Shown here in pieces: positions 1 through 22,477 of a stretch of 64,000 nt of DNA. The notes beneath the pieces were generated by a model. The model was given only the letters and a program-made list of their open reading frames with translations. It was not told where the DNA came from and searched no databases. The DNA lies in the IMG/VR virus record IMGVR_UViG_3300024239_000011, positions 248,001 to 312,000 of that record, one strand, 5' to 3'. Numbering within the stretch: position 1 is the first letter of the stretch; every line of letters starts with the position of its first letter. A program made the translations under genes and the position numbers.

Positions 1-1498
1 CTTCGCCTATGCGACGTTCAAGGTCCATCTGGGTGGAGATCGTTTCTCCCTTCAGTTTGCTAACAACTGCCTTGGTGTCGGACTGGATTTGCTTGATTTC
101 GCGATCCCGATCCATTTCAAGTTTGGTAATGTCGTTCCCGGATCGTGCGATTTCATTGATCAATTGGGTATGGTGTTTTTCCATTTCCGTCTTGATCGTG
201 GTAATGCGGGTTTCGATGCGTTCTATTACGTCATGAATATGCGCTTCGTCTTTCAACGCCTGTCCACAAGCTTTACAATTCTTACTGTCCGGGTCGGACA
301 GTTCTGCTTCTGCTTTCGTAAGCTCTTCCTGTAATGCGGCGGTACGAGTTGCTGTGCTGACTTTGGTGGCTTCTAGAGTCGCACCAACACGCCCGATGGC
401 AGTTTCAGTCTGGGTATTGATGCGGGCAATAGCTTCTTCGCATTGGCGTTCAGTGCGCTCAACCTGGGCAGCAACGGTAGTATCCAGTTGGTCAAGATCA
501 CGTTGATAGCGGTCTAGTTCGTTCTGAAGTCGCGTGACTTGCTGTTCATCGACGCCAGAACTCGTTTCAAGTTCCTTGATCTCAGCAAGCAAACGAGTGG
601 CTTCGGTTTCGATCTGACGGATTTCTTGGGTAATAACATCCCGATCCGCTTTCAACGCTTGTATGGCACGGTCATAGATGTCTTGATCATCAAAGGCTTT
701 CACTTCGGCATCGAAGTCGATACCGGAAAGGGCACTGAGGTTGCCTTCGATTTCTGCGATGGTGTTATGCTGGGTGGTATCCCAACGTTGCACCTTCAAC
801 ATCAGGTCATCAATGCTGGTTTGGATTTTATCGTTCGCTGCTTTGATAGCCTCTATTTTATTCTCTTCCGACTCAATCTCGCGCTTAGAGTTGCGCATCA
901 ACTCCATGATCGTTTCAGCTTTTTCAGACAGCAACTTGATACCAAGAATTTGCTCGATGATTTCGCGTTGCTCGGTTGGCTTCATCATCAAAAACGGGGC
1001 AGTGTAAGTGTTCATAGCTACGACGTGCTTGAACATCTCAAAGTCGATACCGACCACCGTATCAATGGCTTCCTGTGTATCCTTACCAGTACCCTGTTGG
1101 TCGCCAACCTCTTTGACGATTTCCTCGGAATTATCGGACGCACGAACAACGCCGTCCACAATCCACCGAAAGATTTTGGGTTTCTGCCCCCGTTCAACCC
1201 GGTACGTGTGACCTTTCTTCTGGAATTCCAAGGTCACTAAACTCTGTTTATTGTTGATGTTGTTTACAAAGTTGCCCACACGCCGAATCGGTGAAATGGC
1301 ATGTCCGTACAGAGCATAAGAAATGCCATTTACGATGGTGGTTTTTCCAACCCCATTTCTCGCAGAATTGTCGCCCTGTGGCTGGTCTAGGTTCTCGCCC
1401 AGGATGAGGGTCAGTCCCTTACGATCTAGAGATACTACCTGCTCGACGTTACCCACCGAGAGAAAGTTTTTCATCGTGATCTTGGTGAATTCCAACAT
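1..1498 (-). CDS. gp46: T4 gp46-like (Rad50/SbcC) recombination ATPase, 3' end beyond window
   Basis: Manual translation from ATG at 1498: MLEFTKITMKNFLSVGNVEQ; Walker A SARNGVGKTTIVN; long coiled coil; CKAC zinc hook near 266-277. Absent from the ORF track because it runs off the window. Confidence 0.93.
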   Translation of the reverse strand, partial: MLEFTKITMKNFLSVGNVEQVVSLDRKGLTLILGENLDQPQGDNSARNGVGKTTIVNGISYALYGHAISPIRRVGNFVNNINNKQSLVTLEFQKKGHTYRVERGQKPKIFRWIVDGVVRASDNSEEIVKEVGDQQGTGKDTQEAIDTVVGIDFEMFKHVVAMNTYTAPFLMMKPTEQREIIEQILGIKLLSEKAETIMELMRNSKREIESEENKIEAIKAANDKIQTSIDDLMLKVQRWDTTQHNTIAEIEGNLSALSGIDFDAEVKAFDDQDIYDRAIQALKADRDVITQEIRQIETEATRLLAEIKELETSSGVDEQQVTRLQNELDRYQRDLDQLDTTVAAQVERTERQCEEAIARINTQTETAIGRVGATLEATKVSTATRTAALQEELTKAEAELSDPDSKNCKACGQALKDEAHIHDVIERIETRITTIKTEMEKHHTQLINEIARSGNDITKLEMDRDREIKQIQSDTKAVVSKLKGETISTQMDLERRIGE

Positions 1499-1514: not shown

Positions 1515-2468
1515 TCATACTGGGAATATTAATAGCTCAGTTTTCTCGGTGGCTGCAATTTTCTTCCCGTTGTCGGTTTCCACCTTGGTCTGCTGGATCG
1601 TGTATTTGGCATCAAACGCTTCAATACGCGCCCACGAGTAAAGGTCACGGATTTCTGGGCAGTCGTCATATGACAGCACCCACGGGTGTGGACATACCCG
1701 CAGAAGGTCTGCCATGCGGCGGTGATCGTCCTCGGTGAAGGCATGCTGGTACAGATCACCGCCCTTCATGTAATACGGCGGGTCCAAATAGATGAAAGCT
1801 GGTCGGCTGGTGTCGGTGATCATTGCAGCAAAATCGCTGTTGGTGACCCTCGCATCGACCGAAATAAACTGCTTGTGGATCAGGTCGATTTTCTTGCAGA
1901 TGTTGGATGGACTCCAACGGCAATCAATTGGGTACTTGGTATTGGCATCTTGGTTGCGCCCACCTAATGGACCGCCGGATTTGACGCCGAGACCTGAGTA
2001 GGAGATTTGGTGGATCGCCAGCTTCCGGAACCCACATTCAACTATTTCGCTGATAGTGGTTGGGGTTGGATTGTCCAAGAAGAACTGCTTGTAGTCGTCA
2101 AACGCCTGGATGGACGGCTTAAAGCTATTGACCAGTTCCTTTAGCTCTTCTGGATTGTTGATGACTGCGTTCCATAGTGAGAAAATTCCTACATCCTTGT
2201 CGTTGATCCAGAAGGATCGATAGCCAAATGTCTTCTCTTTTGCGTTCTTTCCCTTGGTTGGTGTATCAAAGGAGAACAACAAATCAAACGGGTCTTGTGA
2301 TACCTGCTTGGTGTGGTCGTTGTCTTCAAGCACCATCAGTCCCACGCTACCGCCGCCGAAGAATGGCTCACGATATTCCATCGCATCGTTGCTGGTAGCA
2401 GCAATGGCGGTTAGAATTTCATCGCGGAACTTGGACTTTCCGCCCGGATACCGAAAGAATGAAGCCAT
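1515..2468 (-). CDS. Dam/D12-class DNA adenine methyltransferase
   Basis: FRYPGGKSK, EPFFGGGS (motif I), YLDPPYY (motif IV), WVLSYDD, terminal ELLI. Confidence 0.92.
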   Translation of the reverse strand: MASFFRYPGGKSKFRDEILTAIAATSNDAMEYREPFFGGGSVGLMVLEDNDHTKQVSQDPFDLLFSFDTPTKGKNAKEKTFGYRSFWINDKDVGIFSLWNAVINNPEELKELVNSFKPSIQAFDDYKQFFLDNPTPTTISEIVECGFRKLAIHQISYSGLGVKSGGPLGGRNQDANTKYPIDCRWSPSNICKKIDLIHKQFISVDARVTNSDFAAMITDTSRPAFIYLDPPYYMKGGDLYQHAFTEDDHRRMADLLRVCPHPWVLSYDDCPEIRDLYSWARIEAFDAKYTIQQTKVETDNGKKIAATEKTELLIFPV

Positions 2469-2477
2469 TTCAACTCC

Positions 2478-3443
2478 TTAACCAAATAAGTCTTTGTTTA
2501 TCGCAGATAGGCTGGCTTCTGGACAATTTTTATCTTTGATGGTTAACGTTTTGGCGAAATGGTCCGGTATGGATATTTCTATTGAGAATTTTAAGTCATC
2601 CTCGACTTTACTACTTGCGTTATGTAATCGGAAATTAACTTTCCAATACTCGGTTGTAATCATATAGATGCGGGCAGCTTCGTCCATTTCGGGTGTTAGA
2701 CCGGAAAATAGGGATGAATTGTCGGGGATATTCGTGTAGAGGTGTTTTATTTTTCCGAAGTTGGTTTTAGGGTATGGAAGTGACCCGTTTACATTGATTG
2801 GGTATACTGTAATGTAATCTGATTTTCTTGGGTCGGTGCGTAGAACTGCTTTATAGTAGTCGTGCGTTCCCAGGATGGTTTGGACAATCCCATTTACTAG
2901 TACGTCGCTGGGGGTACGTTGAAAGATCGAGAAAATTATGTTGGTAAGTTGTTGACACAATTTGAGCGGCTTCACATCCAGCCGGTGCCAAAGCGACCCT
3001 ATGTGAGGGGTTAAAACGCTGAGTGTGTCTTTAATCGCGGTGCGCTCGGCGTCGGTTAACTCACATCCACAAATGGTTGTAGTTCTTTCTGAAATACGGA
3101 GCGATTTCTGTTCATCGCTGTTGTGTTTAAGGGATATTCCGCGTCGAATTGACGGGTTGTGTAAAAGAACATCACTTACGTCACCTCCAACAGCTAGGTG
3201 ATCCGATAGGCAAATAGCATTAAGGTTTGAACAATCGTTCAAACCTTCCGTTGCTAAAATATAATCGAGTAGAGTGTTACCAGCAGCCAACATCAGCCGA
3301 TATTCATAGGACGTGCCATTGTATTGAAGGTCGGCAAGTTCTGCCTTTTTCAAATAGTAGGATTTGTCCAGTCGGAGTGTTGCCCCTCGCATGGCAGCGG
3401 CGTCCATAACACTTGCTTCGAACGCATCACCTTTATTAGTCAT
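2478..3443 (-). CDS. HaeIII-family type II restriction endonuclease-like protein
   Basis: NKGDAFE, GDVSDVL, GISLKHN, LGTHDYYK and FRLHNASSKVEDDLKF resemble HaeIII-family blocks (GDVRD, SIKHNH, FRIHNASTKVE.SLKF). Confidence 0.8.
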   Translation of the reverse strand: MTNKGDAFEASVMDAAAMRGATLRLDKSYYLKKAELADLQYNGTSYEYRLMLAAGNTLLDYILATEGLNDCSNLNAICLSDHLAVGGDVSDVLLHNPSIRRGISLKHNSDEQKSLRISERTTTICGCELTDAERTAIKDTLSVLTPHIGSLWHRLDVKPLKLCQQLTNIIFSIFQRTPSDVLVNGIVQTILGTHDYYKAVLRTDPRKSDYITVYPINVNGSLPYPKTNFGKIKHLYTNIPDNSSLFSGLTPEMDEAARIYMITTEYWKVNFRLHNASSKVEDDLKFSIEISIPDHFAKTLTIKDKNCPEASLSAINKDLFG

Positions 3444-4077
3444 TGTATGGGACGTAGGTATGCGTTTCTACGTTGATAAGCGGACGCAGCATATGAGCAT
3501 ACACATCATAATTCTGGTGTGAGCAATCTTTGACCGGTGAGGGGGTGATCGGTAGATTTTCAATGAAAGTTTTGCTCTGCCACCCGGTCAGAACCACCCG
3601 CGCCCATTTCTCGTCACGAGATTCGGCTTCGCAATAACCGAACACGTAGATATCGCATTTTGGTGGCGTAGCAAACCCGCGGTCAGTAATTGCCTGAATA
3701 CGGTTGATCAAGCTGACGGTGGTTGCCAGCTTTACATCAACCGTCTTACCATTTTCAGTGAAATCGGTGTCATCGTATGCCCGGAAAGTGAGGTCCACCG
3801 GGAGGTTCTTAATTTTGGCATAGGCAAACTCCCCTAGCATTCCCATGCGGGTAACGATAAATGGATCATCGTCAGTGTTCTTGATGCCGCGTCCATAGCT
3901 TCCGGGTTTTGTATTACACCCTCGGTGTTTAGACGCGGCATCACACAATTCCCATTCAACGCCTTCAATTTTGATCACCAATGCCGGGTTTGCACGTGGA
4001 CGTTCCAGTGGTCCCAATTTGATGGTGGTGCTGATTTCAGGGGTGATTTGATTAGGCGTGTAGGAAATTTCATTCAT
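3436..4077 (-). CDS. Putative PD-(D/E)XK nuclease-fold protein
   Basis: GMLGEFAYAK...DTDF...TVDVK...DIYVF pattern; overlaps neighbours in an operon. Confidence 0.5.
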   Translation of the reverse strand: MNEISYTPNQITPEISTTIKLGPLERPRANPALVIKIEGVEWELCDAASKHRGCNTKPGSYGRGIKNTDDDPFIVTRMGMLGEFAYAKIKNLPVDLTFRAYDDTDFTENGKTVDVKLATTVSLINRIQAITDRGFATPPKCDIYVFGYCEAESRDEKWARVVLTGWQSKTFIENLPITPSPVKDCSHQNYDVYAHMLRPLINVETHTYVPYND

Positions 4078-4667
4078 GCAGCAAGCCCTTCGACCACAGT
4101 GTAGTCGCGATGCTCGAACCCGATAATCAGGCTGATTGATTCGTCCCAGATGACGGGGAATTCGCGACCACCAACCCCGTATACCAGAAACAGCTTGTGG
4201 TCAGCGGTTTCTTTATCCCAATACAAGTGGGTGTATTCACCGCGCATGATTTTCTTGTTGAGATCGATCCATTGCGGGTAGGATAAATGCTCAAACCCGC
4301 ACTTTTCATCTGCGTCTTTCTTGGAATCGGACAATGCTTTGCGGGCATATGTCGTCATGAAGATCAGTGTATCGAAGAAATGTTCGAGTAAGTATTCACG
4401 GGGTAGAACACCCGTAATGTGCTTCGATCCGTTGTCGCGGGTGCGGGTAACTGCGACGAAGAAATCGTCTCCGTTATACTGCCAACGGACGGCATACACG
4501 GAGACAGCCGAATCTTGTTCCAATAATTTACAGTTCCATGGATTGCTCAAATCAAGAACCATGCTGCACATCTGACAATAATCCTCATGGGACACTTCCA
4601 GATCATAAAACTCTGCCATCTGACGCTTGAAATTACGGAAGGCATTGCCGGTAGCGGACGGAAACAT
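4074..4667 (-). CDS. Hypothetical protein
   Basis: ORF in operon; start at MFPSATG with GGAG upstream. Confidence 0.6.
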   Translation of the reverse strand: MFPSATGNAFRNFKRQMAEFYDLEVSHEDYCQMCSMVLDLSNPWNCKLLEQDSAVSVYAVRWQYNGDDFFVAVTRTRDNGSKHITGVLPREYLLEHFFDTLIFMTTYARKALSDSKKDADEKCGFEHLSYPQWIDLNKKIMRGEYTHLYWDKETADHKLFLVYGVGGREFPVIWDESISLIIGFEHRDYTVVEGLAA

Positions 4668-4947
4668 GCGACAACTCCGAAACAAGAGGAACGGACAACA
4701 AATATGCCGCTGAAGGCGGCTCAGCGGCAATATATTTGTCCACAAGATGAATGGATGTTTTACTTACAGTCACGCATGATTAAGTAATCCCATGCTTGAT
4801 TTCCAGTTGGTAAATGTCCGCATTCTTCTTGGAACAGCATAGTGGGAAGCAAGACGCTGACCAGAATGAGAATGGTGAGAACGATGGGTGCTACGAGGGT
4901 GATGAACGCAATCGGTTTCATGATCCGTCCTGTGTGGGGGAAATCCC

Positions 4948-5304
4948 CTACCGTATACACTCTGCATACAAAGGGAGCAAATCGTTATATAGAGCCATCA
5001 CATCACCTCCGTTCTTTTGCACATAGAAGCTATGTGGTGGTTGGGTACCTTTCATTTTGTTGCACTCTTGACAAGCGGCAACAATGTTGATCCAGCTATG
5101 GGCGCCACCCTTCGAACGCGGGATTATATGGTCCCGCGTTGGATGATCCATGATCTTTCCGCAGTAGGCGCAACGATGGTTCTGAGCTTCTGACAGCCGG
5201 GAAAGCGACACCCCGATCCCATCTGGGTCGTAGCTGCATTCCCGGCGCAAATCTGACCAGATCAACTGGACGCCCATATCATCGCGCATCAAACGCTTCT
5301 CCAA
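4948..5304 (-). CDS. HNH endonuclease
   Basis: CAYCG...TRDHIIPRSKGG...NIVAACQECNKMKG. Confidence 0.9.
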   Translation of the reverse strand: MEKRLMRDDMGVQLIWSDLRRECSYDPDGIGVSLSRLSEAQNHRCAYCGKIMDHPTRDHIIPRSKGGAHSWINIVAACQECNKMKGTQPPHSFYVQKNGGDVMALYNDLLPLYAECIR

Positions 5305-6302
5305 ATCTCAACCAGAATAGCGTTGTCGATGGTAGCCGAATCGACAGCCAACAAACCTTCTTCAATGATCTGGTCGATAGTTTGAAAATTCACTTCTAGT
5401 GCGGTGTTGCTCATTTCATCCACAAGGTTTTTGGGGCGAAGTTCCATTTCACGGACTTGGAACATCCGTTCCAGTTCGTCGCGGATGGTCGCCATTTCCT
5501 CGTAGGACAAATCAACATCAATGGTAACGCGGGCGTACACGTCTGGGGTCAAATACTTCGACGGGTCTGCGATAATATCTGAAAGATTGGTCGTGATGTA
5601 TTTCGGGCAGTTTTCCCAATCGCGATAGATGGGCTTGCCGCCGTGTTCGATCAGCATGCAACCGCGTTCGAAGTCCCATGCGTCGGCGTAGTTGTGAGGG
5701 AACGCATTACCGATATAGTGAATGTTGCCCGACCGCTGGCGTTTATGGAAGTGTCCGGTGAATACGTACTCCTGATTAGTGAACAGGTTCTTGTTGACCG
5801 TCCCGTGGTCCTGGCATTCGATCATCGCGTTAAGCAGAAAACCGGGGATTTCAAAGTGTCCAAAGACGTATTTTTCTTGCCACTCGGGAATACTCTTCCA
5901 TTCGTCTCCAATCATCCAGGGCTGGAAGCGCGTGTCACCAATGACCAATGGATGCTGAACGACCGTCACTTTTTCAAGCAATTGACCAAACCGCGCGGAT
6001 GTCACGTCACGTTTGTCCTTGAAAAACATATCGTGATTTCCCACGACAAAGTAAACGTTCGTGAAATATTCTGCCAGCCGTGTCAACCCTTCAATACCGT
6101 AATTTAGTGTATTCACGTTGATAGTGCTGCGATTATGGAAGAAGTCACCCAAGAAAATACAAGTTTCAGCACCAAATTCATCGGCTTCCTTTATAAACCA
6201 ATCAATAAAATCCAAACAGTCGTTGTTATGGGTGTCTGAATTACTTCGGCACCCAAAATGTATATCTGTGAAGACTGCTGCTTTCTGGAATGCCATCGTC
6301 AT
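5289..6302 (-). CDS. gp47: T4 gp47-like (Mre11/SbcD) recombination nuclease
   Basis: Metallophosphoesterase motifs DIHFG, GDFFH, GNHD, GHFE, GHFH; typical gp55-gp47-gp46 order. Confidence 0.95.
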   Translation of the reverse strand: MTMAFQKAAVFTDIHFGCRSNSDTHNNDCLDFIDWFIKEADEFGAETCIFLGDFFHNRSTINVNTLNYGIEGLTRLAEYFTNVYFVVGNHDMFFKDKRDVTSARFGQLLEKVTVVQHPLVIGDTRFQPWMIGDEWKSIPEWQEKYVFGHFEIPGFLLNAMIECQDHGTVNKNLFTNQEYVFTGHFHKRQRSGNIHYIGNAFPHNYADAWDFERGCMLIEHGGKPIYRDWENCPKYITTNLSDIIADPSKYLTPDVYARVTIDVDLSYEEMATIRDELERMFQVREMELRPKNLVDEMSNTALEVNFQTIDQIIEEGLLAVDSATIDNAILVEIWRSV

Positions 6303-8840: not shown

Positions 8841-10580
8841 CTACTTCAATACCAGCGCATATACCGCGTTACCACAATCATATATAAGGTTCCACCCGTT
8901 CTGGCGCATGTTTTCGATTTCGGTTTGTGCAGGATCAAAATGGTCTAACTTTCCCTTCAGTTTGTGCTTTTGAAACCCATTTCGAGATTGTAAATTCATA
9001 TTTCCTTTGAAATAGAAATAGTTGGGTGGGGAGGTGTTGATATATTCAAATCCAAGTGCCTCGTATAATTTCCCCCGTCCCCAACGTAAATCTGCATAGG
9101 AGATGATGGAAGACGGATTATGATGTGTAATGAACGCATTCAGTAATTTACCAGCACCACCAATCACCGTCGTATTAAGTCCGCTTGAATACCGTAAAAT
9201 TTCCCACTCATATTTGTGCGAATACCGGCTTTTGGAAAAACTCATTGCTGCAACAAGATCATTATCAAAAAGTAGACCATATGTGACGGCGGCATGTGCA
9301 TGCCCTTGTAGGTGGGTTTCGGAAAAAAACATCTTGCTTGTTTGATGATCCAATTCGACTACTTCAGTCTTACGGGCATATATGCTATTAGCATTTCCAA
9401 GAATTGCACAAATACGGCTTTCAACGATTTCGCGTTGAAGCAACCATTCATTTTCCCATACATGGATTAATGTTATTCCGCGTTCTGTGCATAGCTTTGT
9501 TTTCATGGAATGGTAGTTCTTTGGTTTCCCGGCATTGATTGAATGCCACCATAACCCATCGTACTCGAACGCAATGTTTTTTGAGGGTACGAAAATGTCC
9601 AATTCGTACCCTTTTAACAAATGCCTGTTATTCGTTGTTACATCATAACCGAACCCGCGAATGAAATCCGTTAATTCGCGTTGTCCACTCGATACGAAGT
9701 GAACTTTTGGGGTAATTCCATGTTGTTTGAACCGGTGACACACCGGGAAAATAGATATCCCCAACTGTTGGGCGATTTCTTTTAATGTATATGTTTGATT
9801 TTGTTCTTTAAGCCAGTCAATATCATCCAGTTTATCTGCGACTCCTGCTGGAAAATGATATTGGTTTGGTTTACGTACCCCTATGGACGTGAATAGCTCT
9901 TGTAGCTTCTCTTTAATGTGAAGAACTTTCATGGGATTGTCACGCCCATACTTTGCGATCCAGTGGTTTTTGGTTTGCTTAATAACCTCTGAATTTTGAG
10001 ATGGGTAATCTGTTCCAAACTTTTGGCGGTTGGTTTCTTTGACTTTTTCGATGATTTTGGTTGATTGAGTTGGCCAAGCAACTCCATGGTTGTGAAGATT
10101 TGATTGCTGAACTTTATCTAGAATTTCAGCATTCATGGTAGGTGACTTCACCCCATATCGATCAATACAAGTTTGAGCGGTTGCGTGTTTGACAGCATCC
10201 GTCATTGATGCGAAATCCGCACCGTATTTTTCTCGGTTAGTCGTTTTCCGCTTGGTAATGATGTTTTGGCGATCTGTTTCCGAGCGATGTTCGCGTGCTT
10301 TTTCAGCGTTTTCTCGGTTACACGCGCATACCGACTGGTTGCCGCAAAATTTTAGATAGCCTTTATTAAAGGAAACAAAGGTAGGGCGCGAACCGTTAAC
10401 GCACATTATCTCGGGGACGGTTTTTCCATTCAAATATAGCCACAGTTTTTCTATATCAGGGACATCGAAGCCTCCAATAAAAGCTTCGATGTCTGCCCAA
10501 AAGTGTTCTTTTGCTATCTTCAGTTTTACTCGTGTATCAGAGTGTGATGATAGCATTTCAAGGTGGTGTTCTCGGTACAT
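8841..10580 (-). CDS. Hef/Vsr-like free-standing homing endonuclease with N-terminal repeats
   Basis: Repeated T..(E/K)KYG...P units; ELDIFVPSKNIAFEYDGLWWH; IHVWENEW; IYARK; SYADLRW; IYDCG; AT-rich. Confidence 0.8.
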   Translation of the reverse strand: MYREHHLEMLSSHSDTRVKLKIAKEHFWADIEAFIGGFDVPDIEKLWLYLNGKTVPEIMCVNGSRPTFVSFNKGYLKFCGNQSVCACNRENAEKAREHRSETDRQNIITKRKTTNREKYGADFASMTDAVKHATAQTCIDRYGVKSPTMNAEILDKVQQSNLHNHGVAWPTQSTKIIEKVKETNRQKFGTDYPSQNSEVIKQTKNHWIAKYGRDNPMKVLHIKEKLQELFTSIGVRKPNQYHFPAGVADKLDDIDWLKEQNQTYTLKEIAQQLGISIFPVCHRFKQHGITPKVHFVSSGQRELTDFIRGFGYDVTTNNRHLLKGYELDIFVPSKNIAFEYDGLWWHSINAGKPKNYHSMKTKLCTERGITLIHVWENEWLLQREIVESRICAILGNANSIYARKTEVVELDHQTSKMFFSETHLQGHAHAAVTYGLLFDNDLVAAMSFSKSRYSHKYEWEILRYSSGLNTTVIGGAGKLLNAFITHHNPSSIISYADLRWGRGKLYEALGFEYINTSPPNYFYFKGNMNLQSRNGFQKHKLKGKLDHFDPAQTEIENMRQNGWNLIYDCGNAVYALVLK

Positions 10581-10616
10581 GTCGGTAAATTAGCAAATTA
10601 CCGCATTATAACCAAT

Positions 10617-11486
10617 TTATTCCTCGCGATAATTCTTCTCCATTTCACGCATTTTATATTCATGTTCAATCTGACGTGTGAACGATGGGTTGTGACCCAT
10701 TGCTTGAAGCATATCATCGCGAATACTTTGGTTTTTCTTTTCGATGTTTAACACTCTAGTAAAAGATGCAGTAATTACTGCTGTGTAATAGGCAAAGGGA
10801 TTTGGTGTAATTGATCGTGACTCGTCAAATTGTAGTCCAACCTGGGAAAGCTGCACTAGGGCTTGGCTTTTCATTTCGTCAATGTATGTGTAACCGCGCC
10901 AATTTCCGCGTTGACTATATTTGTCCACCAATTTCATGAACATAAAAGCGAGCCGGTGGGTAATTTTACCATGGTCGGTGCAGAATTGATCACCTTTCCA
11001 ATGGCTCCGTAACACTTCAACAAACTGCCCGTCTTTGAGAATGTAGTGTTTAAAGGGCGGGAAGTTCATCCGTGCCCGTTCTTCGTCCTCTCCGTCTGCA
11101 TTTTTCTTTTTCTTCTTGTATTCCGGTGGAATGTGTTCATCCGTCATGACGCGGAATACGAGATTTTCAGTTTTGATATCATCAGCCGATGTATTGACTT
11201 GAATTTCTTGGGGGCGAAATCCCATTTCAAGCAATTCTTCTTTTTTCTGCTTGGTGACGCGCTCGGCGTTATTCGCCTTGGCTGTTTGAATCATTTCTTC
11301 GGTGATATCGGACAAACGACCTTGTTTTTTCTGATCACCGCCCTCACCAACGATAATGTCGTAGTATCGAAACCTATCCTGTTGATACTCCGGATCAAGC
11401 AATGAGCAATAGGTTAGCTTTGATTTGTGTATTTCGATAAGGAGTTCCTTGTTAGACAAGTAATTGATGCGTGGCGGTACTGACAT
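10617..11486 (-). CDS. gp55: T4 gp55-like late-transcription sigma factor
   Basis: NYLSNKELL, NWRGYTYIDEMK, QFDESRS..NPFAYYT, EKK.Q.IRD. Confidence 0.92.
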   Translation of the reverse strand: MSVPPRINYLSNKELLIEIHKSKLTYCSLLDPEYQQDRFRYYDIIVGEGGDQKKQGRLSDITEEMIQTAKANNAERVTKQKKEELLEMGFRPQEIQVNTSADDIKTENLVFRVMTDEHIPPEYKKKKKNADGEDEERARMNFPPFKHYILKDGQFVEVLRSHWKGDQFCTDHGKITHRLAFMFMKLVDKYSQRGNWRGYTYIDEMKSQALVQLSQVGLQFDESRSITPNPFAYYTAVITASFTRVLNIEKKNQSIRDDMLQAMGHNPSFTRQIEHEYKMREMEKNYREE

Positions 11487-11583
11487 TGAAATTCCTTAAC
11501 TGTTAATGGAACGCGATTTAATACTAATATCCTATAATATTTGTTGACACAATAAATAATTAACTTTGGTTTTTTAGTTCCAC

Positions 11584-11589
11584 TAAATA
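11584..11589 (+). promoter_or_regulatory. Late promoter TAAATA for the baseplate block
   Basis: cacTAAATAc 24 nt before the ATG at 11614; the same hexamer precedes other structural blocks. Confidence 0.7.
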
Positions 11590-11613
11590 CTCTATATGTG
11601 AAGGAGAGTATTC

Positions 11614-12507
11614 ATGGCAACGGATGATACCCCGACGATTGGGCAGAAAATGTTGAATGATGCAGAAACACTTCAGAGTGACTTTGCGCGTGATACGGCT
11701 TCGCTTGCTGATAAAATTGGTTCCATTATGCCATCGTTTGGATCGCGGGGGGTGGGTACTAATACTGGGGCGTTGTCTAAGGGAGAGCAGTATCTTCGGA
11801 ACACTTATGGGCAGAACCAGAATGCGAATATATCCCAACCTGCCTCTGGACAGACAACCACCAAGTTTGACCACCGGGCACGTCTACGCCCAATGCCAAA
11901 AGCGGAAGAGTTTGTGTATGGTGAGCGGGATCGTAATACCAACATTTTGTTTCCGTTGTATGAGTCTGGTGGACTGATTTGGCCATTTACACCATCCATC
12001 AATATTCAACAAAGCGTTGAATATACGGCGTATCAAGCAGTGCATAGCAATCAGGAATACAAGGCGTATTCTCATACTCCTGCCTTTTCATTTGCCTGTG
12101 CTGGTATATGGACTGCGCAGAATGAGCAAGAAAAAGCCTATTGTCTTGCCGGTTTGCATTTCCTTCGAACTGTGACGAAGATGCATTTTGGCATCAATGA
12201 TAAGGACAATCGCGGAACACCACCCCCTGTGTTGCTGTTTTCTGCATATGGTAATCTGATGTTCAACGATCTCCCGGTGATTATCAATTCATTCACGGTG
12301 GACTTTACTAATGATGTTGACTATGTGCAATTCCAACGAACGGTTGGGCAACAACGCCAAACTGGCACCGCGTGGTTGCCTGCTAAATTTAATGTGTCGG
12401 TACAGATGACGGTGCAAAAAACGCCAAGTCAAATGCGTAATGATTTCAATCTTAATAAGTTCCGTACTGGGGAGTTGTTGCTTTCTGGGAAAGGTGGGTG
12501 GTTCTGA
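11614..12507 (+). CDS. Baseplate/tail-tube initiator-like structural protein
   Basis: HFLRTVTKM.FG, GTPPPVLLFSAYG, DVDY motifs; position ahead of gp53-hub-gp5. Confidence 0.7.
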   Translation: MATDDTPTIGQKMLNDAETLQSDFARDTASLADKIGSIMPSFGSRGVGTNTGALSKGEQYLRNTYGQNQNANISQPASGQTTTKFDHRARLRPMPKAEEFVYGERDRNTNILFPLYESGGLIWPFTPSINIQQSVEYTAYQAVHSNQEYKAYSHTPAFSFACAGIWTAQNEQEKAYCLAGLHFLRTVTKMHFGINDKDNRGTPPPVLLFSAYGNLMFNDLPVIINSFTVDFTNDVDYVQFQRTVGQQRQTGTAWLPAKFNVSVQMTVQKTPSQMRNDFNLNKFRTGELLLSGKGGWF

Positions 12508-12803
12508 TGGCTACATATTCCGGACACTCGCCGTATGTGACGACCCCTCAAAATTCGTGGTATTTGGGCTACTATAATCACCGCAGTATCCTTCCAAACA
12601 TCACTGATGATTTGGTCGTGATAGAGCAGAAGCATCAGCACAGACCTGACCTTCTCAGTTACGACATGTACGGTACTGTGGATTTCTGGTGGGTTTTTGC
12701 GGCGAGAAATATGGATTTGATCAAAGACCCGATCTATGACTTGAACGCCGGGATGCAAATTTACGTTCCGTCGATGGCAAGTATTTCCTCAATGGTGTTC
12801 TAA
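12507..12803 (+). CDS. gp53-like (LysM-like) baseplate wedge protein
   Basis: HRPDLLSYDMYG...WWVFA.RN...DPIYD...G..IYVP. Confidence 0.85.
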   Translation: MATYSGHSPYVTTPQNSWYLGYYNHRSILPNITDDLVVIEQKHQHRPDLLSYDMYGTVDFWWVFAARNMDLIKDPIYDLNAGMQIYVPSMASISSMVF

Positions 12804-15800
12804 TGGCTACTTCGTCACCACCGCCCATGGCGGGGGAAGACCCCTCCAAGGTCAAATCTTCATCTACTGGGACTGACGGGAAAACCGTCCAGACTATGAA
12901 GGTTCCGGTCACATTCAATGAGAACGCGACCAATAGGACTGAGAATGATCGCTTGGCAGGGATTAATCTCAGTCAAATCGAGGAAAACTGCCTTAATCGG
13001 TACCACAATTATACCTACCATTGGCGGATGTTCCTGATCAATGACATGGACGAACGCGAAAAGCTTCTCAGTGGTGATATCGGGAAATACGCTGACACGA
13101 TCAAGAGCCTAGAGAAAGCTGGGCGCCTTCTGACAATTGTCGAAAGTGGTGTTACTGGGTATGGTATTGACGAAGTGCAAATGGTCACCAAGTGTGCGGA
13201 TCGAAATACCACCACAATCGGGTTCAATATTGAGCTAACCGAGCCAATGGGTTCGAGTTTTCTTGATAAGCTTGGTTTGGCGACCGTCCATCTTGGGGTG
13301 CCTACGTTCCGTGAGGCTCCATGGCATTTGGAATTGACCTTCATGGGGTACGAACCGGAAACCGGGTTGCCACGACGGATCACTGATGGGCAAGGGCGTC
13401 CAATCTACAAACTTTGGCCGGTCTACCTGACCGACATCAAGACGACGATGATCCATAGTTTGACCAAGTATAGTATTAAAGCGGTTCCTGCCTGTGAGAA
13501 GGCGAGAGCGAATAACCTTGCCTTGCTGCGTACTGGGGCAAAAATCACTGCCAGTACGCTTGGGGAAGCGTTGACAAAACTTGCGGAAGAAATGCCCGCA
13601 AAGATGTCAGAGAGCGATTACTACATTCAAGACAACAAGTACCGCTTTGAGTTCCACCCGCCGGAAATGGCATCGTGGCGTCTGGTCGAACAGGGCGATG
13701 GTTTCATCAAGCCGAACCGGTCTAGCGGGTGGGATAAGGTCCAAATCGACAAAACGTCGGTTCAATTTGCCGCGAGTTCGAATATCTATGACATCATCGA
13801 TATTCTCTCCATTTGCACCACTGAGTGTCAGCACAATTTGGGGGTCGTGAACCAAGACCTAAAACAACGGCAGGATGGCGACAATGGTGAGCGTGCTGCG
13901 GGCGGCTCGATCACCGATATCAGCCAGACCAACTTTCAGGCAGTTTCCGTTTATCCGGAGGTTACCAAGCTAACGTTTCGTCCCACGACCGGCGATTATG
14001 ACCGTGAGATTGTGTACCACATTCATCAACGGGATATCTCAACCCCGCTCATCGATCAGCGGCAGACAGAACGCCTCGCAAGAGACAAAGTAGCGGCACA
14101 ACAGCGGTATTTTGAGTTCGGGCGCCGCTTGAATAAACGTTACGACTATATGTACACCGGTCTCAACACCGAAATATTGAGCCTGGATATCAAGCTCGAC
14201 AATTTGTATCGCGCAACCCTTGCTCATATGGGCGGGCTGTACAGCAATCCTTTGATCACCGAAGGGTACTTCCTTGATAAGGAAAAGATCAAGGTGCGTA
14301 TGGATGCTCTAAAAAGCACGTTCGAGAACAATAAGCGCGAGATCAGAAAGATCGATGAAGAATTGAAGTCCAGCAGTGTTACTGCCGGGAAGCGCAAAGA
14401 GCTTGAGTTGCAGCGAAATAAGTTGGAAAGCAACAATAACGCTTACAAAGAACGTATGCGGACGTTGGCGATGGGTACCGCCAAACCGAATGATCCGACT
14501 AATGACGCGGTGTTCGAAGTCGAACAGTCGGCTCTTTCACGGGATGCGGAAATTCATGGCTCGCCATATGCACAGCAGCTTGCCAAGACCCAGAATGATC
14601 GTCTCAAGAAGTTCAAGAAGGATAATGAAAAGGTTGCGTATGCCGAAAATCTTCAGGGTGACCTTCAGGTGACTTTGGATTGGTATGCGTCAACTGGTAA
14701 AGGCACCAGTCTGATTATCTTTGGTGAAGACGACCGTAAGGCAGAAGCCGATTTCTTGATGTCAGTTGAGACCAAGTATGGGCGCGGGCGAGGCATCGCG
14801 GCATCGGTCTTGAATCAGGTTTACACGTCGAACGCATACGGGGATATGGTCACGATTGACCTCGAAGTGCGTGGCGATCCGTATTGGCTCGGGATGGACT
14901 CCTACGAGCTTTTGAAATACCAGCACGATACGATCAGTCGCTCACGTCCTGATACCTCCAAAGGCACGCCAAGCGGTGACGGACCACATCAGGTGAACGG
15001 GTACCCGAACTTCGTTGAAGCGCAGCATTTGTTCCTGCTGACGTTCAATGCGCCTAAAGAATATGACGAAATGGGTCTCACCCGGAATAACGGGAACGAG
15101 CCATCTTTTTTCGAGCGCGTGTATCACGTTCGCGAGGTTACCAGCATTTTCCGCCAAGGGCAGTTTATCCAGCGCCTCAAGGCGAATATGGACCCTCATG
15201 TTGCCCCTGCCTCGCTGATCGAACGAGTCAAGTTGCTTCAGGATATGCGTAAGGGAGAAGTGAGTGTTGTTACACCAAACTCCCCGGCGGCAACCACGAA
15301 GAACAATTCCCCGCTTAAAGCCAAAACGGCAACCGGAACATCTGCGACAAGCGCGGATTATGATTCTAAACGGTACGACTTCATCAAGGGGGTCGAGGGC
15401 GAGAAGTTGAAATCCTATACGGATACTACTGGACACCGCACCGTTGGCGTCGGGTTTAACATGGATGCTCCCGGTGCCAAGGAAAAATTTAATTCGACCT
15501 TGGGTACTGATGACCAGTATTTTCAGGATGTGTATAGCGGGCGTCAGAATATTACCCCTGAACAATCTAAGCAACTATTCAGTACAAGCGTAGTTGATGC
15601 GGAAGGCGTTGTTGATCGAAAACTTAGTGGAACTTCGCTAAGTGAAAACGAACGTATCGCTATGGTGTCGATGGCGTACAACAACCCGTCGTTGATTGGG
15701 TCGGGAATGACATCAGCCGTGCAAAATGGGGACAAGCAAGCGGTGGTCGATGAAATCCTCTATAAGTCAAATGGCGGCAACAGCAAGGGTATTGCTAATC

Positions 15801-15889
15801 GTCGCTATCAGGAAGCCGCCTTGTTTGCTGGTTCTGAGAGCATTGCCAGTGTGCCTGAATATAAGAAATATGCATCGAGGTATGCCTAA
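12803..15889 (+). CDS. Baseplate hub protein with C-terminal T4-type (GH24) lysozyme
   Basis: K.YDY.YTG.N and LEVRGDPYWL hub motifs; EGEKLKSYTDTTGHRTVGVGFN with intact E/D/T triad. Confidence 0.85.
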   Translation: MATSSPPPMAGEDPSKVKSSSTGTDGKTVQTMKVPVTFNENATNRTENDRLAGINLSQIEENCLNRYHNYTYHWRMFLINDMDEREKLLSGDIGKYADTIKSLEKAGRLLTIVESGVTGYGIDEVQMVTKCADRNTTTIGFNIELTEPMGSSFLDKLGLATVHLGVPTFREAPWHLELTFMGYEPETGLPRRITDGQGRPIYKLWPVYLTDIKTTMIHSLTKYSIKAVPACEKARANNLALLRTGAKITASTLGEALTKLAEEMPAKMSESDYYIQDNKYRFEFHPPEMASWRLVEQGDGFIKPNRSSGWDKVQIDKTSVQFAASSNIYDIIDILSICTTECQHNLGVVNQDLKQRQDGDNGERAAGGSITDISQTNFQAVSVYPEVTKLTFRPTTGDYDREIVYHIHQRDISTPLIDQRQTERLARDKVAAQQRYFEFGRRLNKRYDYMYTGLNTEILSLDIKLDNLYRATLAHMGGLYSNPLITEGYFLDKEKIKVRMDALKSTFENNKREIRKIDEELKSSSVTAGKRKELELQRNKLESNNNAYKERMRTLAMGTAKPNDPTNDAVFEVEQSALSRDAEIHGSPYAQQLAKTQNDRLKKFKKDNEKVAYAENLQGDLQVTLDWYASTGKGTSLIIFGEDDRKAEADFLMSVETKYGRGRGIAASVLNQVYTSNAYGDMVTIDLEVRGDPYWLGMDSYELLKYQHDTISRSRPDTSKGTPSGDGPHQVNGYPNFVEAQHLFLLTFNAPKEYDEMGLTRNNGNEPSFFERVYHVREVTSIFRQGQFIQRLKANMDPHVAPASLIERVKLLQDMRKGEVSVVTPNSPAATTKNNSPLKAKTATGTSATSADYDSKRYDFIKGVEGEKLKSYTDTTGHRTVGVGFNMDAPGAKEKFNSTLGTDDQYFQDVYSGRQNITPEQSKQLFSTSVVDAEGVVDRKLSGTSLSENERIAMVSMAYNNPSLIGSGMTSAVQNGDKQAVVDEILYKSNGGNSKGIANRRYQEAALFAGSESIASVPEYKKYASRYA

Positions 15890-18564: not shown

Positions 18565-18567
18565 GGG

Positions 18568-18596
18568 TTGACAACTACCGGACACCTCGCTAAAGT
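18568..18596 (+). promoter_or_regulatory. Sigma70-type early promoter
   Basis: TTGACA-17 nt-TAAAGT upstream of the small ORF at 18627. Confidence 0.6.
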
Positions 18597-18626
18597 AGTG
18601 CCCATAACAAGCCACGAGGGAGTGCC

Positions 18627-18800
18627 ATGGCTAAGCGTATTGTTCTGACCCGCACGTTGAAGGTCGCGAAGGGCAATCTGGAAATCGGTCGTAAGGTCGC
18701 CGTTTCCGATTTGGACCCGCACGAGGTCAATGACCTGATCGCTCTGACCGGCGCCGTCATCCAGGGTCAGTACCTCGTGCGTCCCAGCGCGGTGGCGTGA
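18627..18800 (+). CDS. Small hypothetical protein (57 aa, MAKRIVLTRTLK...)
   Basis: GAGGGAG RBS, own promoter and terminator; below the ORF-track cutoff. Confidence 0.7.
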   Translation: MAKRIVLTRTLKVAKGNLEIGRKVAVSDLDPHEVNDLIALTGAVIQGQYLVRPSAVA

Positions 18801-18828
18801 TTTCGCGGTCTGAACAACTGGACTACAA

Positions 18829-18858
18829 AGAAACGGCGGCTAATTAGCCGCCGTTTCT
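18829..18858. terminator. Bidirectional intrinsic terminator
   Basis: AGAAACGGCGGC-TAATTA-GCCGCCGTTTCT between convergent genes. Confidence 0.75.
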
Positions 18859-19184
18859 GCTTGCCATTTCTTCCACATCGAACGCATGTTGTCACACATC
18901 AACATGTCTTCGGTGATTGGTACCTCGATTTCAAACATGCTGTCTGATAGAATAACCGTTCCGGTAGGTTCGGTCACTGTTGGGAAAAAATTTAACGCCA
19001 GCCGGGCTGCATCCGTGTGGATTTGTGAATCTAATGGGTTTGCCATGGTTCCCATGTTTACCTTGGTGTGCCCGATGATCGTTCCGTGTTGAACCACGGT
19101 AACCTGATAGATCAGGCTGACCGCCTCAATCAAAGACCAGTTCGGTTGGGGAAATGTAAAAGTATCCGGGTCGGTAGTCTGCAT
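18840..19184 (-). CDS. Hypothetical protein
   Basis: ORF in a minus-strand operon. Confidence 0.55.
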   Translation of the reverse strand: MQTTDPDTFTFPQPNWSLIEAVSLIYQVTVVQHGTIIGHTKVNMGTMANPLDSQIHTDAARLALNFFPTVTEPTGTVILSDSMFEIEVPITEDMLMCDNMRSMWKKWQAETAAN

Positions 19185-19560: not shown

Positions 19561-19579
19561 CTTCAGATGCCCGTCTAGA

Positions 19580-20179: not shown

Positions 20180-20235
20180 AGTTCTTCTCTCAGGTTGACT
20201 GAAGAACCTAACGCGACCAAACTCAGGTGGTCAAT

Positions 20236-22434: not shown

Positions 22435-22477
22435 AGTGTGTTCCTTCGTTCGTTCTTATTTACCCGAGTGAACGAAG

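What the first reader, a model, noticed from the sequence alone, without database searches (positions are those of the whole stretch)
1515..3443. HaeIII-like endonuclease paired with an adenine MTase in a GGCC-depleted genome
Seen: a HaeIII-family-like gene directly upstream of a Dam-type MTase. By eye I found no GGCC before 10072 and only about 20 in the window, against roughly 250 expected (64000/256), while GATC is abundant. Known: HaeIII cuts GGCC and is normally paired with a C5 MTase; an adenine MTase cannot protect GGCC. Inference: either the phage degrades GC-rich host or competitor DNA while avoiding the site, or the nuclease has a new specificity matching the MTase. Host restriction pressure alone could also explain the depletion.
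Basis: partly seen in the sequence, partly recalled or inferred. Interest (0 to 1): 0.68.

Follow-up and report, generated by a model that had tools for sequence, protein, structure and literature searches.

The report
Phage GGCC restriction-modification module, site-purged genome
A giant environmental phage carries a HaeIII-type cutting enzyme next to a methylase that looks adenine-specific but belongs to a group with proven GGCC cytosine methylases. The genome's tenfold lack of GGCC is real, but it is part of a much wider purge of restriction sites that also occurs in phages without this enzyme.

Summary
Window 2478-3443 (-) encodes a HaeIII-family endonuclease (PF09556, 47.7 bits). It lies 9 bp upstream of a D12-fold methyltransferase at 1515-2468 (-). 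GGCC occurs 20 times in the window and 164 times in the 543-kb phage record, against about 1600-1950 expected (z = -46).

- **The methylase is not a Dam.** Its only clear solved relative is M.CbeI, a D12-fold enzyme with a DPPY motif that makes GGm4CC and partners the HaeIII-like CbeI. The pair is therefore best read as a CbeI-type GGCC restriction-modification module. The specificity is inferred, not shown, because the phage methylase sits in a sister clade and the nuclease is a very long branch.
- **The nuclease does not explain the depletion.** At least 21 palindromic hexamers, plus RGATCY and GRGCYC, are also eliminated. A complete 459-kb phage with no HaeIII-family gene is equally depleted. 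A co-occurring strain lacks the nuclease.
- **The residual sites show an unexplained rule.** Of the 164 remaining GGCC sites, 160 have a T on the 5' side (or A on the 3' side), mostly TT.

Verdict: a new member of a known kind, with an unexplained flank signature.

The parts
2478..3443 (-). HaeIII-family type II restriction endonuclease, 321 aa
   Evidence: Pfam PF09556, 47.7 bits. PADLOC REase_II, E 4.7e-13. It keeps the family-invariant D88, D91, S104, K106, R116, R272 and H274, and 36 of 54 conserved columns. AlphaFold model pLDDT 89.7. Best structural matches are HinP1I (Z 9.4) and MspI (Z 6.3). Its start overlaps the end of orf213 by 8 nt, with no clear ribosome-binding site. There is no close relative among 5.8 billion proteins, and the best distant hit is 33% identical.
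1515..2468 (-). D12-fold (alpha-class) DNA methyltransferase, 317 aa, with FGGGS and DPPY motifs
   Evidence: PF02086, E 4.9e-24. The Dam model TIGR00571 scores 59.7 bits against a cut-off of 114.85. PDB: M.CbeI (7M6B) E 4.2e-23, DpnM E 0.015. Best PADLOC match is PD-Lambda-5_B, 184 bits. In the tree it sits in a large clade of phage and mobile-element methylases, sister to the HaeIII-linked and M.CbeI/DmtB clades. Between two co-occurring strains, 22 changed codons are synonymous and 8 are not.
2469..2477 (-). 9-bp spacer carrying the methylase's Shine-Dalgarno sequence (AAGGAG, overlapping the nuclease stop codon)
   Evidence: Sequence read.
3436..4077 (-). orf213, an uncharacterised phage protein (DUF5843-like by language-model and structure look-alikes). 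It is the usual neighbour of this methylase clade.
   Evidence: No Pfam, PHROG or PADLOC match. ESM Atlas look-alikes are viral DUF5843 clusters. Homologues of 34-40% identity sit beside the methylase in L140, L141, L143 and many IMG/VR loci.
2469..4073 (.). 1605-bp strain-variable module (nuclease plus orf213), absent from a co-occurring strain that keeps the methylase
   Evidence: A contig joint from 2468 to 4074 in run X3 has depth 36, against 33 for the nuclease-bearing form. Runs X2 and X4 have loose ends at the same two positions. The module itself has 0 GGCC (4.2 expected) and 1 of the 21 purged hexamers (6.3 expected).
4074..4745 (-). orf223, unknown function. Its stop codon overlaps the orf213 start (ATGA).
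   Evidence: A 42%-identical homologue sits at the syntenic place in L140.
2..1498 (-). SbcC/gp46-like ATPase (runs off the window edge); flank of the locus
   Evidence: AAA_23/SMC_N assignment comes from the gene table. It is 52% identical to the L140 homologue.
5289..6302 (-). SbcD/gp47-like phosphoesterase; the other flank. An HNH endonuclease gene (4948-5304) overlaps its end.
   Evidence: It is 64% identical to the L140 homologue.
10072..59375 (.). The window's 20 GGCC sites. The genome's only four sites without a T/A flank are at 35076, 35298, 36385 and 38578.
   Evidence: These four lie in a GC-rich stretch (52-58% GC against 47-50% elsewhere) at about 33000-39000.

Best explanation
The two genes form a phage-borne type II restriction-modification module of the CbeI/M.CbeI kind. 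A HaeIII-family, HinP1I/MspI-like PD-(D/E)XK nuclease most likely cuts GGCC. A D12-fold methylase, despite its 'adenine' annotation, most likely blocks that cut on the phage's own residual sites, probably as GGm4CC.

Expression looks tuned the way such modules usually are. The methylase has a strong ribosome-binding site. The nuclease has none and appears translationally coupled to the gene upstream.

The module is accessory. It sits between the SbcC-like and SbcD-like genes, and the nuclease, together with orf213, is present in one strain and absent from a co-occurring one.

The genome-wide GGCC shortage was not created by this nuclease. It is one item in a long-term purge of at least 25 type II recognition sequences, driven by restriction systems of the (unknown) hosts. 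A genome already almost free of GGCC can take up a GGCC nuclease at little risk to itself. It can then use the nuclease against unmodified host DNA or co-infecting phage DNA.

Shown: gene identities, arrangement, fold, depletion statistics, strain variability, and depletion in phages without the nuclease. Inferred: GGCC specificity of both enzymes, cytosine-N4 chemistry, order of events and biological role.
For: Nuclease family, catalytic residues and fold.

Methylase affinity: it is closest to M.CbeI and not to Dam.

Published precedent: M.CbeI, DmtB and M.Ssp6803II are pfam02086 enzymes that make GGm4CC and block HaeIII or CbeI (PMC3425538; PMC6105098).

Recurrence of the pairing: a HaeIII-family nuclease next to a D12-fold methylase occurs in 8 independent loci, namely L008, L012 and L014/15 and L076, L088, L091, L093 and L094. 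These fall in at least 3 places of the nuclease tree.

Methylase tree: the phage clade is sister to the HaeIII-linked and M.CbeI/DmtB clades, and E. coli Dam is a remote outgroup.

Operon-like layout.

Broad site purge.

Depletion without the nuclease:
- G002 has 55 GGCC vs 869 expected and G004 has 91 vs 430, with no PF09556 in either.
- Many IMG/VR loci have 0-1 GGCC per 20 kb.
- L140, the nearest relative, lacks the nuclease at the syntenic spot. It has GGCC O/E of about 0.4 and hexamer O/E of 0.18.

Strain without the nuclease.

The module is itself purged of the avoided sites, so it is not a recent import from an unadapted source.
Against: Methylase placement: the phage methylase is not inside the M.CbeI/DmtB clade or the HaeIII-linked clade. 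Its own clade has thousands of members. None of the 80 viral loci examined has a HaeIII-family neighbour. That clade's specificity is unknown. Many of its carriers are themselves GGCC-poor, which is odd if the enzyme protected every GGCC.

Nuclease divergence: it is the longest branch of its family. It has lost residues conserved in 92-100% of the other family sequences aligned: R90S, H114S, W124I, Y133E and Y163C. Its site may therefore differ.

Gene neighbours: the nearest relative (L140) and other phages pair the methylase with orf213, not with a nuclease. The nuclease may thus be a later insertion beside an unrelated orphan methylase.

Unexplained pattern: the extreme T/TT-flank rule of the residual sites is not predicted by plain GGCC methylation.

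No direct data: there is no methylation or cleavage evidence.
Confidence: 0.5

Rival explanations
1. Restriction with flank-limited or no modification. The nuclease cuts GGCC unless a T (best TT) flanks one side. This could be intrinsic to a monomeric HinP1I/MspI-like enzyme that must bind in both orientations to make a double-strand break. Alternatively, the neighbouring methylase may only modify flanked sites such as GGCCA(A). The phage has purged every cuttable site, so its self-protection rests mainly on avoidance. This is.
For: 160 of 164 residual sites carry a T/A flank, and 126 carry TT/AA (P = 5e-44). VGGCCB occurs 4 times against 988 expected. TTGGCC has O/E 0.40, against 0.11 or less for the other 15 dinucleotide contexts. 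TTGGCCAA is no better tolerated than a single TT flank, so one protected side is enough. Only 39 sites are unavoidable Trp-Pro codons. The V..B share is significantly lower here (4/164) than in the nuclease-free G002 (11/55; Fisher P = 6e-5). The structural kinship is to REases that act as monomers, which I know from the literature on MspI and HinP1I.
Against: A weaker T-flank bias also appears in GGCC-poor phages with no HaeIII-family gene: G002 has 20% V..B against 46% expected, and L140 has 11 of 12 sites T-flanked. The bias is therefore not specific to carrying the nuclease. Four V..B sites exist in the same assembled genome. The nuclease is strain-variable, whereas purging about 1000 sites needs long evolutionary time.
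Confidence: 0.15
2. New specificity. The divergent nuclease no longer recognises plain GGCC but an adenine-containing site, for example a flank-extended or unrelated sequence. That site matches a true N6-adenine methylase, and the GGCC depletion is coincidental.
For: The nuclease is a very long branch with substitutions at otherwise near-invariant positions. The methylase lies outside the two GGCC-associated clades. It has a DPPY motif. Its best defence-library match is PD-Lambda-5_B, whose host strain needed deletion of the mrr region. Mrr is known, from my own knowledge, mainly for restricting m6A and m5C DNA.
Against: As far as I recall, all characterised PF09556 members cut GGCC. The most conserved family motifs are kept (D-x2-D, S-x-K, FR-x-H-N-A-S). 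The closest characterised relatives of the methylase are all GGCC m4C enzymes. DPPY does not discriminate, because M.CbeI also has it.
Confidence: 0.15
3. The two genes are not a functional pair. The nuclease gene is a selfish or decaying insertion beside an orphan anti-restriction methylase. It is inactive, or acts on something other than duplex GGCC sites.
For: The nuclease is absent from a co-occurring strain and from the nearest relative. It has no close homologue anywhere. An HNH homing-type endonuclease lies in the same inter-sbcCD insertion zone.
Against: The frame is intact at 321 codons. The model is confident and the catalytic residues are kept. The gene is purged of the genome's avoided sites, which implies long residence under the same selection. 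It is tightly packed, with an 8-nt overlap upstream and a 9-bp spacer downstream.
Confidence: 0.1

Closest known systems
CbeI / M.CbeI of Caldicellulosiruptor bescii (GG^CC; alpha-class N4-cytosine methylase; PDB 7M6B)
   Same: A HaeIII-like nuclease sits next to a pfam02086 'adenine' methylase with FxGxG and DPPY motifs. M.CbeI is the phage methylase's only clear solved relative (E 4e-23).
   Different: The phage methylase is only about 85 bits from M.CbeI, whereas Microcystis DmtB-like enzymes score 348 bits. It falls in a sister clade. The phage nuclease is a long orphan branch. The host is a giant phage rather than a bacterial chromosome. CbeI's own sequence could not be fetched for a direct comparison.
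DmtB (Anabaena) / M.Ssp6803II (Synechocystis): orphan GGm4CC methylases
   Same: The D12 domain predicts adenine specificity, but the enzymes methylate the first C of GGCC and block HaeIII (PMC6105098). They belong to the same RYPGGK-motif superclade.
   Different: They are solitary regulatory enzymes of cyanobacteria with GGCC-rich genomes. Here the genome is GGCC-poor and a nuclease is attached.
HaeIII / M.HaeIII and other PF09556 systems with C5 methylases
   Same: Same nuclease family. The two other nearest metagenomic nuclease homologues (P0002, P0004) sit beside PF00145 methylases.
   Different: There is no C5 methylase anywhere in this genome.
Virus-encoded type II R-M systems of chloroviruses (e.g. 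CviAII), and restriction-site avoidance in phages
   Same: A lytic virus carries a nuclease-methylase pair that could degrade unmodified host DNA. Palindrome avoidance as an anti-restriction strategy is well known. Both statements are from my own knowledge.
   Different: Chloroviruses rely on methylation rather than site loss. Here both occur together, and the purge covers an unusually long list of sites in a genome of at least 543 kb.
PD-lambda-5 (E. coli prophage defence, 'compacted RM+Abi'; PMC9519451)
   Same: The methylase's best PADLOC match is PD-Lambda-5_B (184 bits).
   Different: No PD-Lambda-5_A-like partner was detected. The nuclease here is HaeIII-family.

Membership tests
HaeIII restriction endonuclease family (PF09556) | Profile match above the curated threshold | tested here: met
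   47.7 bits against a cut-off of 25, covering profile positions 79-294 of 298. Found again by the genome search.
HaeIII restriction endonuclease family (PF09556) | Family-invariant acidic and lysine residues (D-x2-D ... S-x-K) and the C-terminal FR-x-H-N-A-S block | tested here: met
   D88, D91, S104, K106, R116, R272 and H274 are invariant across 61 sequences including the phage protein. However, 18 of 54 conserved columns differ.
HaeIII restriction endonuclease family (PF09556) | PD-(D/E)XK restriction-enzyme fold | tested here: met
   Model pLDDT 89.7. HinP1I Z 9.4 (208 residues aligned), MspI Z 6.3, Hjc resolvases Z about 5.
HaeIII restriction endonuclease family (PF09556) | Cleavage of GG^CC | not testable with these tools
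   Needs the purified enzyme.
CbeI-type R-M (HaeIII-like nuclease + alpha-class D12-fold GGCC m4C methylase) | Adjacent nuclease and D12-fold methylase genes | tested here: met
   9-bp spacer, same strand. The same pairing occurs in 8 other loci.
CbeI-type R-M (HaeIII-like nuclease + alpha-class D12-fold GGCC m4C methylase) | Methylase closer to M.CbeI/DmtB than to true Dam enzymes | tested here: met
   7M6B scores 85 bits and DpnM 18 bits. E. coli and T4 Dam are not detected at E<=10.
CbeI-type R-M (HaeIII-like nuclease + alpha-class D12-fold GGCC m4C methylase) | Methylase nested within the M.CbeI/DmtB clade or the HaeIII-linked clade | tested here: not met
   It sits in a separate, well-supported clade (97% SH-aLRT) that is sister to both.
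CbeI-type R-M (HaeIII-like nuclease + alpha-class D12-fold GGCC m4C methylase) | N4-methylation of the first C of GGCC | not testable with these tools
   Needs a methylome or an in vitro assay.
Dam (GATC) methylases | Score above the curated Dam model threshold | tested here: not met
   TIGR00571 scores 59.7 bits against a cut-off of 114.85. In the tree E. coli Dam is joined by a branch of about 7 changes per site.
PD-lambda-5 defence system | Both components (A and B) present | tested here: not met
   Only the B (methylase) model matches. The nuclease, orf213 and orf223 do not match any PD-Lambda-5_A model.

The most novel reading that the evidence does not exclude
The phage practises restriction with little or no matching modification. 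Its divergent, monomer-type HaeIII-family nuclease cuts GGCC in any DNA. Sites with a T or TT flank on one side escape, either because they are only nicked or because they are covered by flank-dependent methylation. The phage genome has been purged of every site that could suffer a double-strand cut. Self versus non-self would then be written into genome composition rather than into methylation.
Probability: 0.13. Interest if true: 0.8.

Novelty: new member of a known kind. Interest (0 to 1): 0.45.

Why it matters
**Annotation trap.** The apparent paradox of a GGCC nuclease with an adenine methylase dissolves once the M.CbeI/DmtB precedent is applied. D12/'Dam' labels on phage methylases cannot be read as adenine specificity.

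**Biology.** This is a giant soil or subsurface phage that combines three anti-restriction or offensive tools:
- elimination of at least 25 restriction sites,
- several methylases,
- a strain-variable restriction nuclease whose probable target is the one tetramer the genome has nearly lost.

Together these suggest that site-poor genomes are pre-adapted to carry the matching nuclease as a weapon.

**Open question.** The strict T/TT-flank rule of the surviving GGCC sites is a clean, testable signature. Its origin is unknown: a flank preference of GGCC enzymes, or a flank preference of the phage methylase.

Tried and rejected
**Close phage relatives of the locus.** Megablast and tblastn against 50,697 phage records found none. 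The word-based protein search found only the nuclease itself.

**Searching genomes with the 61-sequence nuclease alignment.** This failed because no block was conserved enough. The one genome scan was therefore spent on the methylase.

**Coding constraint as the cause of the T flank.** Rejected. Only 39 of 164 sites are Trp-Pro codons, and the others could be removed by synonymous changes.

**A thymine or adenine hypermodification protecting T-containing sites.** Rejected. Most of the eliminated hexamers contain T and A.

**Co-location of the few surviving copies of other purged hexamers with the GC-rich island.** They do not co-locate.

**SbcD-based relatives in IMG/VR (43-49% identity).** They are too distant and too AT-rich to test the depletion. 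They show none.

**Neighbours of the closest bacterial methylase homologues.** These are mobile-element genes such as ArdC and an integrase. No nuclease was recognised.

**The nuclease tree.** It is unresolved, and the phage branch is too long to place.

**More of the L140 contig.** It could not be fetched because the record is not held.

**Whether the 869-kb contig is a concatemer.** Not resolved.

**CbeI paper.** The 2011 paper (PMC4269323) is not held.

**Not attempted.** Complex prediction was not used, because no claim here rests on a protein-protein contact.
Full report
**1. Context**

The window is bases 248,001-312,000 of a 543,035-bp IMG/VR virus record with 48.7% GC. The source is JGI metagenome 3300024239. 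Four runs of one subsurface/soil study hold the locus.

The nearest cultured kin by the SbcD-like protein are jumbo myoviruses, at 44-47% identity: Pseudomonas PA5oct and E. coli Rak2-like phages.

The genes around the finding are all on the minus strand:

| Window coordinates | Gene |
|---|---|
| 5289-6302 | SbcD-like |
| 4948-5304 | HNH endonuclease |
| 4074-4745 | orf223 |
| 3436-4077 | orf213 |
| 2478-3443 | HaeIII-family nuclease |
| 1515-2468 | D12-fold methylase |
| 2-1498 | SbcC-like |

**2.

The nuclease matches Pfam RE_HaeIII above threshold, and the methylase matches MethyltransfD12.

- GGCC occurs 20 times in the window, first at 10072, against 182-233 expected.
- GGCC occurs 164 times in the genome, against 1586 (maximal-order Markov) or 1908 (base composition) expected.
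- O/E is 0.10 and z is -46, the lowest of all tetramers. The depletion is uniform along the genome.
- GATC as a tetramer is at expectation.
- No C5 methylase (PF00145) exists in the record.

**3. The nuclease**

It has no close relative. Among 5.8 billion clustered proteins it finds only itself. Among 1.84 billion cluster representatives the best hit is 33% identical, with 113 hits at E<=1e-3.

In a 61-sequence alignment it keeps every invariant residue (D88, D91, S104, K106, R116, G192, R272, H274). It keeps 36 of 54 columns conserved at 80% or more. It differs at R90S, H114S, W124I, Y133E, Y163C, E173I and S283D.

The AlphaFold model is confident, with pLDDT 89.7 and pTM 0.85. Its best structural matches are HinP1I (Z 9.4, 208 residues aligned) and MspI (Z 6.3), both four-base cutters. 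Holliday-junction resolvases and EcoRV follow. The fold is therefore PD-(D/E)XK, with a D...S-x-K site analogous to the Q-x-K of HinP1I and the N-x-K of MspI. That motif comparison is from my own knowledge.

In the family tree it is the longest branch and cannot be placed.

**4. The methylase is not a Dam**

The curated Dam model scores 59.7 bits against a cut-off of 114.85.

Against all PDB sequences, the only hit at E<=1e-3 is 7M6B (E 4.2e-23). DpnM scores E 0.015. E. coli and T4 Dam are not detected at E<=10.

7M6B is M.CbeI of Caldicellulosiruptor bescii (PMC8616854). Chung et al. (PMC3425538) showed the following about it:
- It was annotated as a D12-class N6-adenine methylase and carries a DPPY motif.
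- It protects DNA from CbeI, an isoschizomer of HaeIII encoded next to it.
- It produces N4-methylcytosine in GGCC.
- It is 57% identical to Anabaena DmtB, which makes GGm4CC.

Synechocystis M.Ssp6803II is another pfam02086 protein that makes GGm4CC and blocks HaeIII (PMC6105098).

**5. How general is the pairing?**

A HaeIII-family nuclease lies beside a D12-fold methylase in metagenomic loci L008, L012 and L014/L015. The same is true in five bacterial genomes: L076, L088, L091, L093 and L094. Two other near homologues of the nuclease lie beside C5 methylases. The D12-linked nucleases fall in at least three parts of the nuclease tree.

**6. Where the phage methylase sits**

A maximum-likelihood tree of 91 D12-fold methylases separates three groups:
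- a HaeIII-linked clade (100% support);
- a clade holding the Microcystis and Spirulina DmtB-like enzymes (348 bits to M.CbeI), with Helicobacter and other sequences;
- a sister clade (97% support) holding the phage enzyme and its many 47-57% identical relatives (3059 hits at E<=1e-10).

E. coli Dam is a remote outgroup.

The phage clade's best defence-library match is PD-Lambda-5_B. That system is described as a compacted prophage 'RM+Abi' system (PMC9519451).

Membership in the GGCC-specific group is therefore plausible by parsimony. Both labelled sister groups are GGCC-associated, and the one member of the phage clade with a nuclease partner has a HaeIII-family one. It is not demonstrated.

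**7. The module is accessory and strain-variable**

Laying the contigs of four runs on 1400-4800 showed a joint in run X3 from 2468 to 4074. It removes exactly 1605 bp: the spacer, the nuclease and orf213. Its depth is about 36, against about 33 for the nuclease-bearing form and about 85 on the shared flanks. Runs X2 and X4 have loose ends at the same two positions.

The nuclease-free strain keeps the methylase as a diverged allele. Of its changed codons, 22 are synonymous and 8 are not, which indicates purifying selection.

The nearest true relative found is L140. Its identities to this phage are SbcD 64%, SbcC 52%, methylase 57%, orf223 42% and orf213 40%. Its gene order is orf223-orf213-methylase, with no nuclease.

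orf213-like genes are the usual neighbours of this methylase clade in other phage contigs, in either order. None of 80 IMG/VR loci carrying this methylase family has a HaeIII-family ORF within 10 kb.

The nuclease-orf213 module has 0 GGCC (4.2 expected) and 1 purged hexamer (6.3 expected). It has therefore lived under the same avoidance regime for a long time.

Expression signals fit a restriction-modification module. AAGGAG sits 5 nt before the methylase start. The nuclease has no clear ribosome-binding site, and an 8-nt overlap with orf213 suggests coupling.

**8. The depletion is part of a much larger purge**

Twenty-one palindromic hexamers occur 0-2 times against 42-207 expected:

AGATCT, CGATCG, GGATCC, AGCGCT, AGGCCT, CGGCCG, GGGCCC, AGTACT, CGTACG, CAGCTG, GAGCTC, CCCGGG, GCCGGC, ACGCGT, CCGCGG, GCTAGC, CTCGAG, GTCGAC, CTGCAG, GTGCAC, GACGTC.

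Degenerate and asymmetric words are also missing or rare:
- all RGATCY, absent;
- all GRGCYC, absent;
- CAGCTC, 1 observed against 148 expected (both strands pooled);
- CTCCAG, 7 against 156;
- CTCCTC, 5 against 146.

GGCC is the only tetramer treated this way.

**9. Depletion without the nuclease**

Five large viral records that carry a homologous methylase have no PF09556 match. The same search does find the gene in this genome.

| Record | Status | GGCC observed (first 400 kb) | GGCC expected |
|---|---|---|---|
| G002, 459 kb | complete | 55 | 869 |
| G004, 461 kb | terminal repeats | 91 | 430 |

Many 20-kb loci have 0-1 GGCC against 30-60 expected, for example L154, L157, L163, L164 and L177.

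G002 and G004 are not close kin of this phage. Only 14-25 of its 425 ORFs of 150 aa or more have hits in them. They therefore show that such depletion arises without the nuclease, not that it is inherited.

L140, the true relative without the nuclease, has GGCC O/E of about 0.4 and hexamer O/E of 0.18 in 14.5 kb.

**10. An unexplained regularity**

Of the 164 surviving GGCC sites, 160 have T immediately 5' or A immediately 3' on at least one side. Of these, 126 have TT or AA. The binomial P is 5e-44.

| Context | Observed | Expected | O/E |
|---|---|---|---|
| VGGCCB | 4 | 988 | 0.004 |
| TTGGCC | 132 | 330 | 0.40 |
| [A/C/G]TGGCC | 58 | 789 | 0.05-0.09 |
| TTGGCCAA | 6 | 14 | 0.43 |

Expected values are first-order Markov. 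One favourable flank therefore suffices. Only 39 sites are unavoidable Trp-Pro codons.

The four V..B sites all lie within 3.5 kb (window 35076-38578), in a GC-rich stretch. That stretch holds a beta-class DPPY methylase and a convergent 394-aa ORF. It looks like a later acquisition.

A weaker form of the same bias appears in nuclease-free, GGCC-poor phages:
- G002: V..B 11 of 55 against 46% expected, P = 5e-5.
- G004: 31 of 91 against 48% expected, P = 0.005.
- L140: 11 of 12 sites T-flanked.

The bias is significantly more extreme here (Fisher P = 6e-5).

Possible causes are listed below. I could not separate them.
- A flank preference of the GGCC nucleases that select against the sites. A monomeric enzyme that must bind both orientations would only nick a site with one bad flank.
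- A flank preference of the shared methylase clade.
- In this phage only, added pressure from its own nuclease.

**11. Other methylases**

Three beta-class (PF01555) genes exist:
- one with the m4C-type TSPPY motif, at genome 210,350-211,327;
- one with DPPY, at window 34488-35432;
- one without a clear motif IV, at genome 514,288-515,280.

Their specificities are unknown.

**12. Verdict**

The gene pair is most economically a CbeI-type GGCC restriction-modification module carried as an accessory weapon by a giant phage. The genome had already been stripped of GGCC and some 25 other restriction sites by host pressure.

The kind is known: HaeIII-like nuclease plus D12-fold GGCC methylase, virus-borne R-M, and site avoidance. 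The setting and the flank rule are new.

The specificity of both enzymes, the base that is methylated and the role in infection remain inferences. A methylome and two simple enzyme assays would settle them.

Noticed in passing
whole genome G000 (window included): Twenty-one palindromic hexamers are absent (0-2 copies against 42-207 expected). So are all RGATCY and all GRGCYC, with near-absence of CAGCTC, CTCCAG and CTCCTC. No eliminated hexamer begins with T or contains AA/TT.
   Followed up: partly
whole genome; window sites 10072-59372: Residual GGCC sites obey a flank rule. 160 of 164 have a 5' T or 3' A on at least one side, and 126 have TT/AA. VGGCCB occurs 4 times against 988 expected. 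The cause is unknown.
   Followed up: partly
window 33000-39000: A GC-rich stretch (52-58% GC) holds a beta-class DPPY methylase (34488-35432, +) and a convergent, overlapping 394-aa ORF with no family match (35419-36603, -). This may be a second R-M pair. The stretch contains the genome's only four GGCC sites without a T/A flank, so it looks like a recent acquisition.
   Followed up: partly
window 38666-53632 (-): A single open reading frame of 4988 codons.
   Followed up: no
L137 (ENA ERZ27245855 k141_178484, 869,618 bp); L271: The identical locus lies at 535-542 kb of an 869,618-bp contig, and proteins from both ends of the 543-kb record fall in two contigs of the 0.2-1 Mb size class. Another contig runs at least 24 kb past the record's right end. 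The 543-kb record may therefore be a fragment, or the larger contig a concatemer. A preprint gives 841 kb as the largest phage genome to date (10.1101/2025.02.27.640493).
   Followed up: partly
G000 210,350-211,327 (+) (L003 1276-2253): A beta-class methylase with the TSPPY motif typical of N4-cytosine enzymes sits directly upstream of a truncated class-II aminoacyl-tRNA-synthetase-like gene. A third beta-class methylase at 514,288-515,280 lacks a recognisable motif IV.
   Followed up: partly
G004 (IMG/VR 3300037247_001786, 461 kb), first 400 kb: This unrelated huge phage has no GCGC at all and lacks ten palindromic hexamers, a different avoidance profile from the present phage.
   Followed up: no
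window 3436-4077; L140 9367-9984; L141 10893-11516; L143 10938-11579: orf213-like genes (about 205-213 aa, DUF5843-like) are the recurrent neighbour of this methylase clade in phages, upstream or downstream, often overlapping it. This is an uncharacterised two-gene unit.
   Followed up: partly
window 3677: One of only two CCGCGG sites in the whole genome lies inside orf213, within the strain-variable module.
   Followed up: no
window 4948-5304 (-): An HNH endonuclease gene overlaps the end of the SbcD-like gene by 16 nt. The 3.8 kb between the SbcC-like and SbcD-like genes looks like an insertion hotspot.
   Followed up: no
window 1861-2430 and 4113-4263: Strain differences are concentrated in the roughly 600 bp and 150 bp flanking the 1605-bp indel, while the outer flanks are identical. 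This suggests the module is exchanged by homologous recombination through its neighbours.
   Followed up: partly
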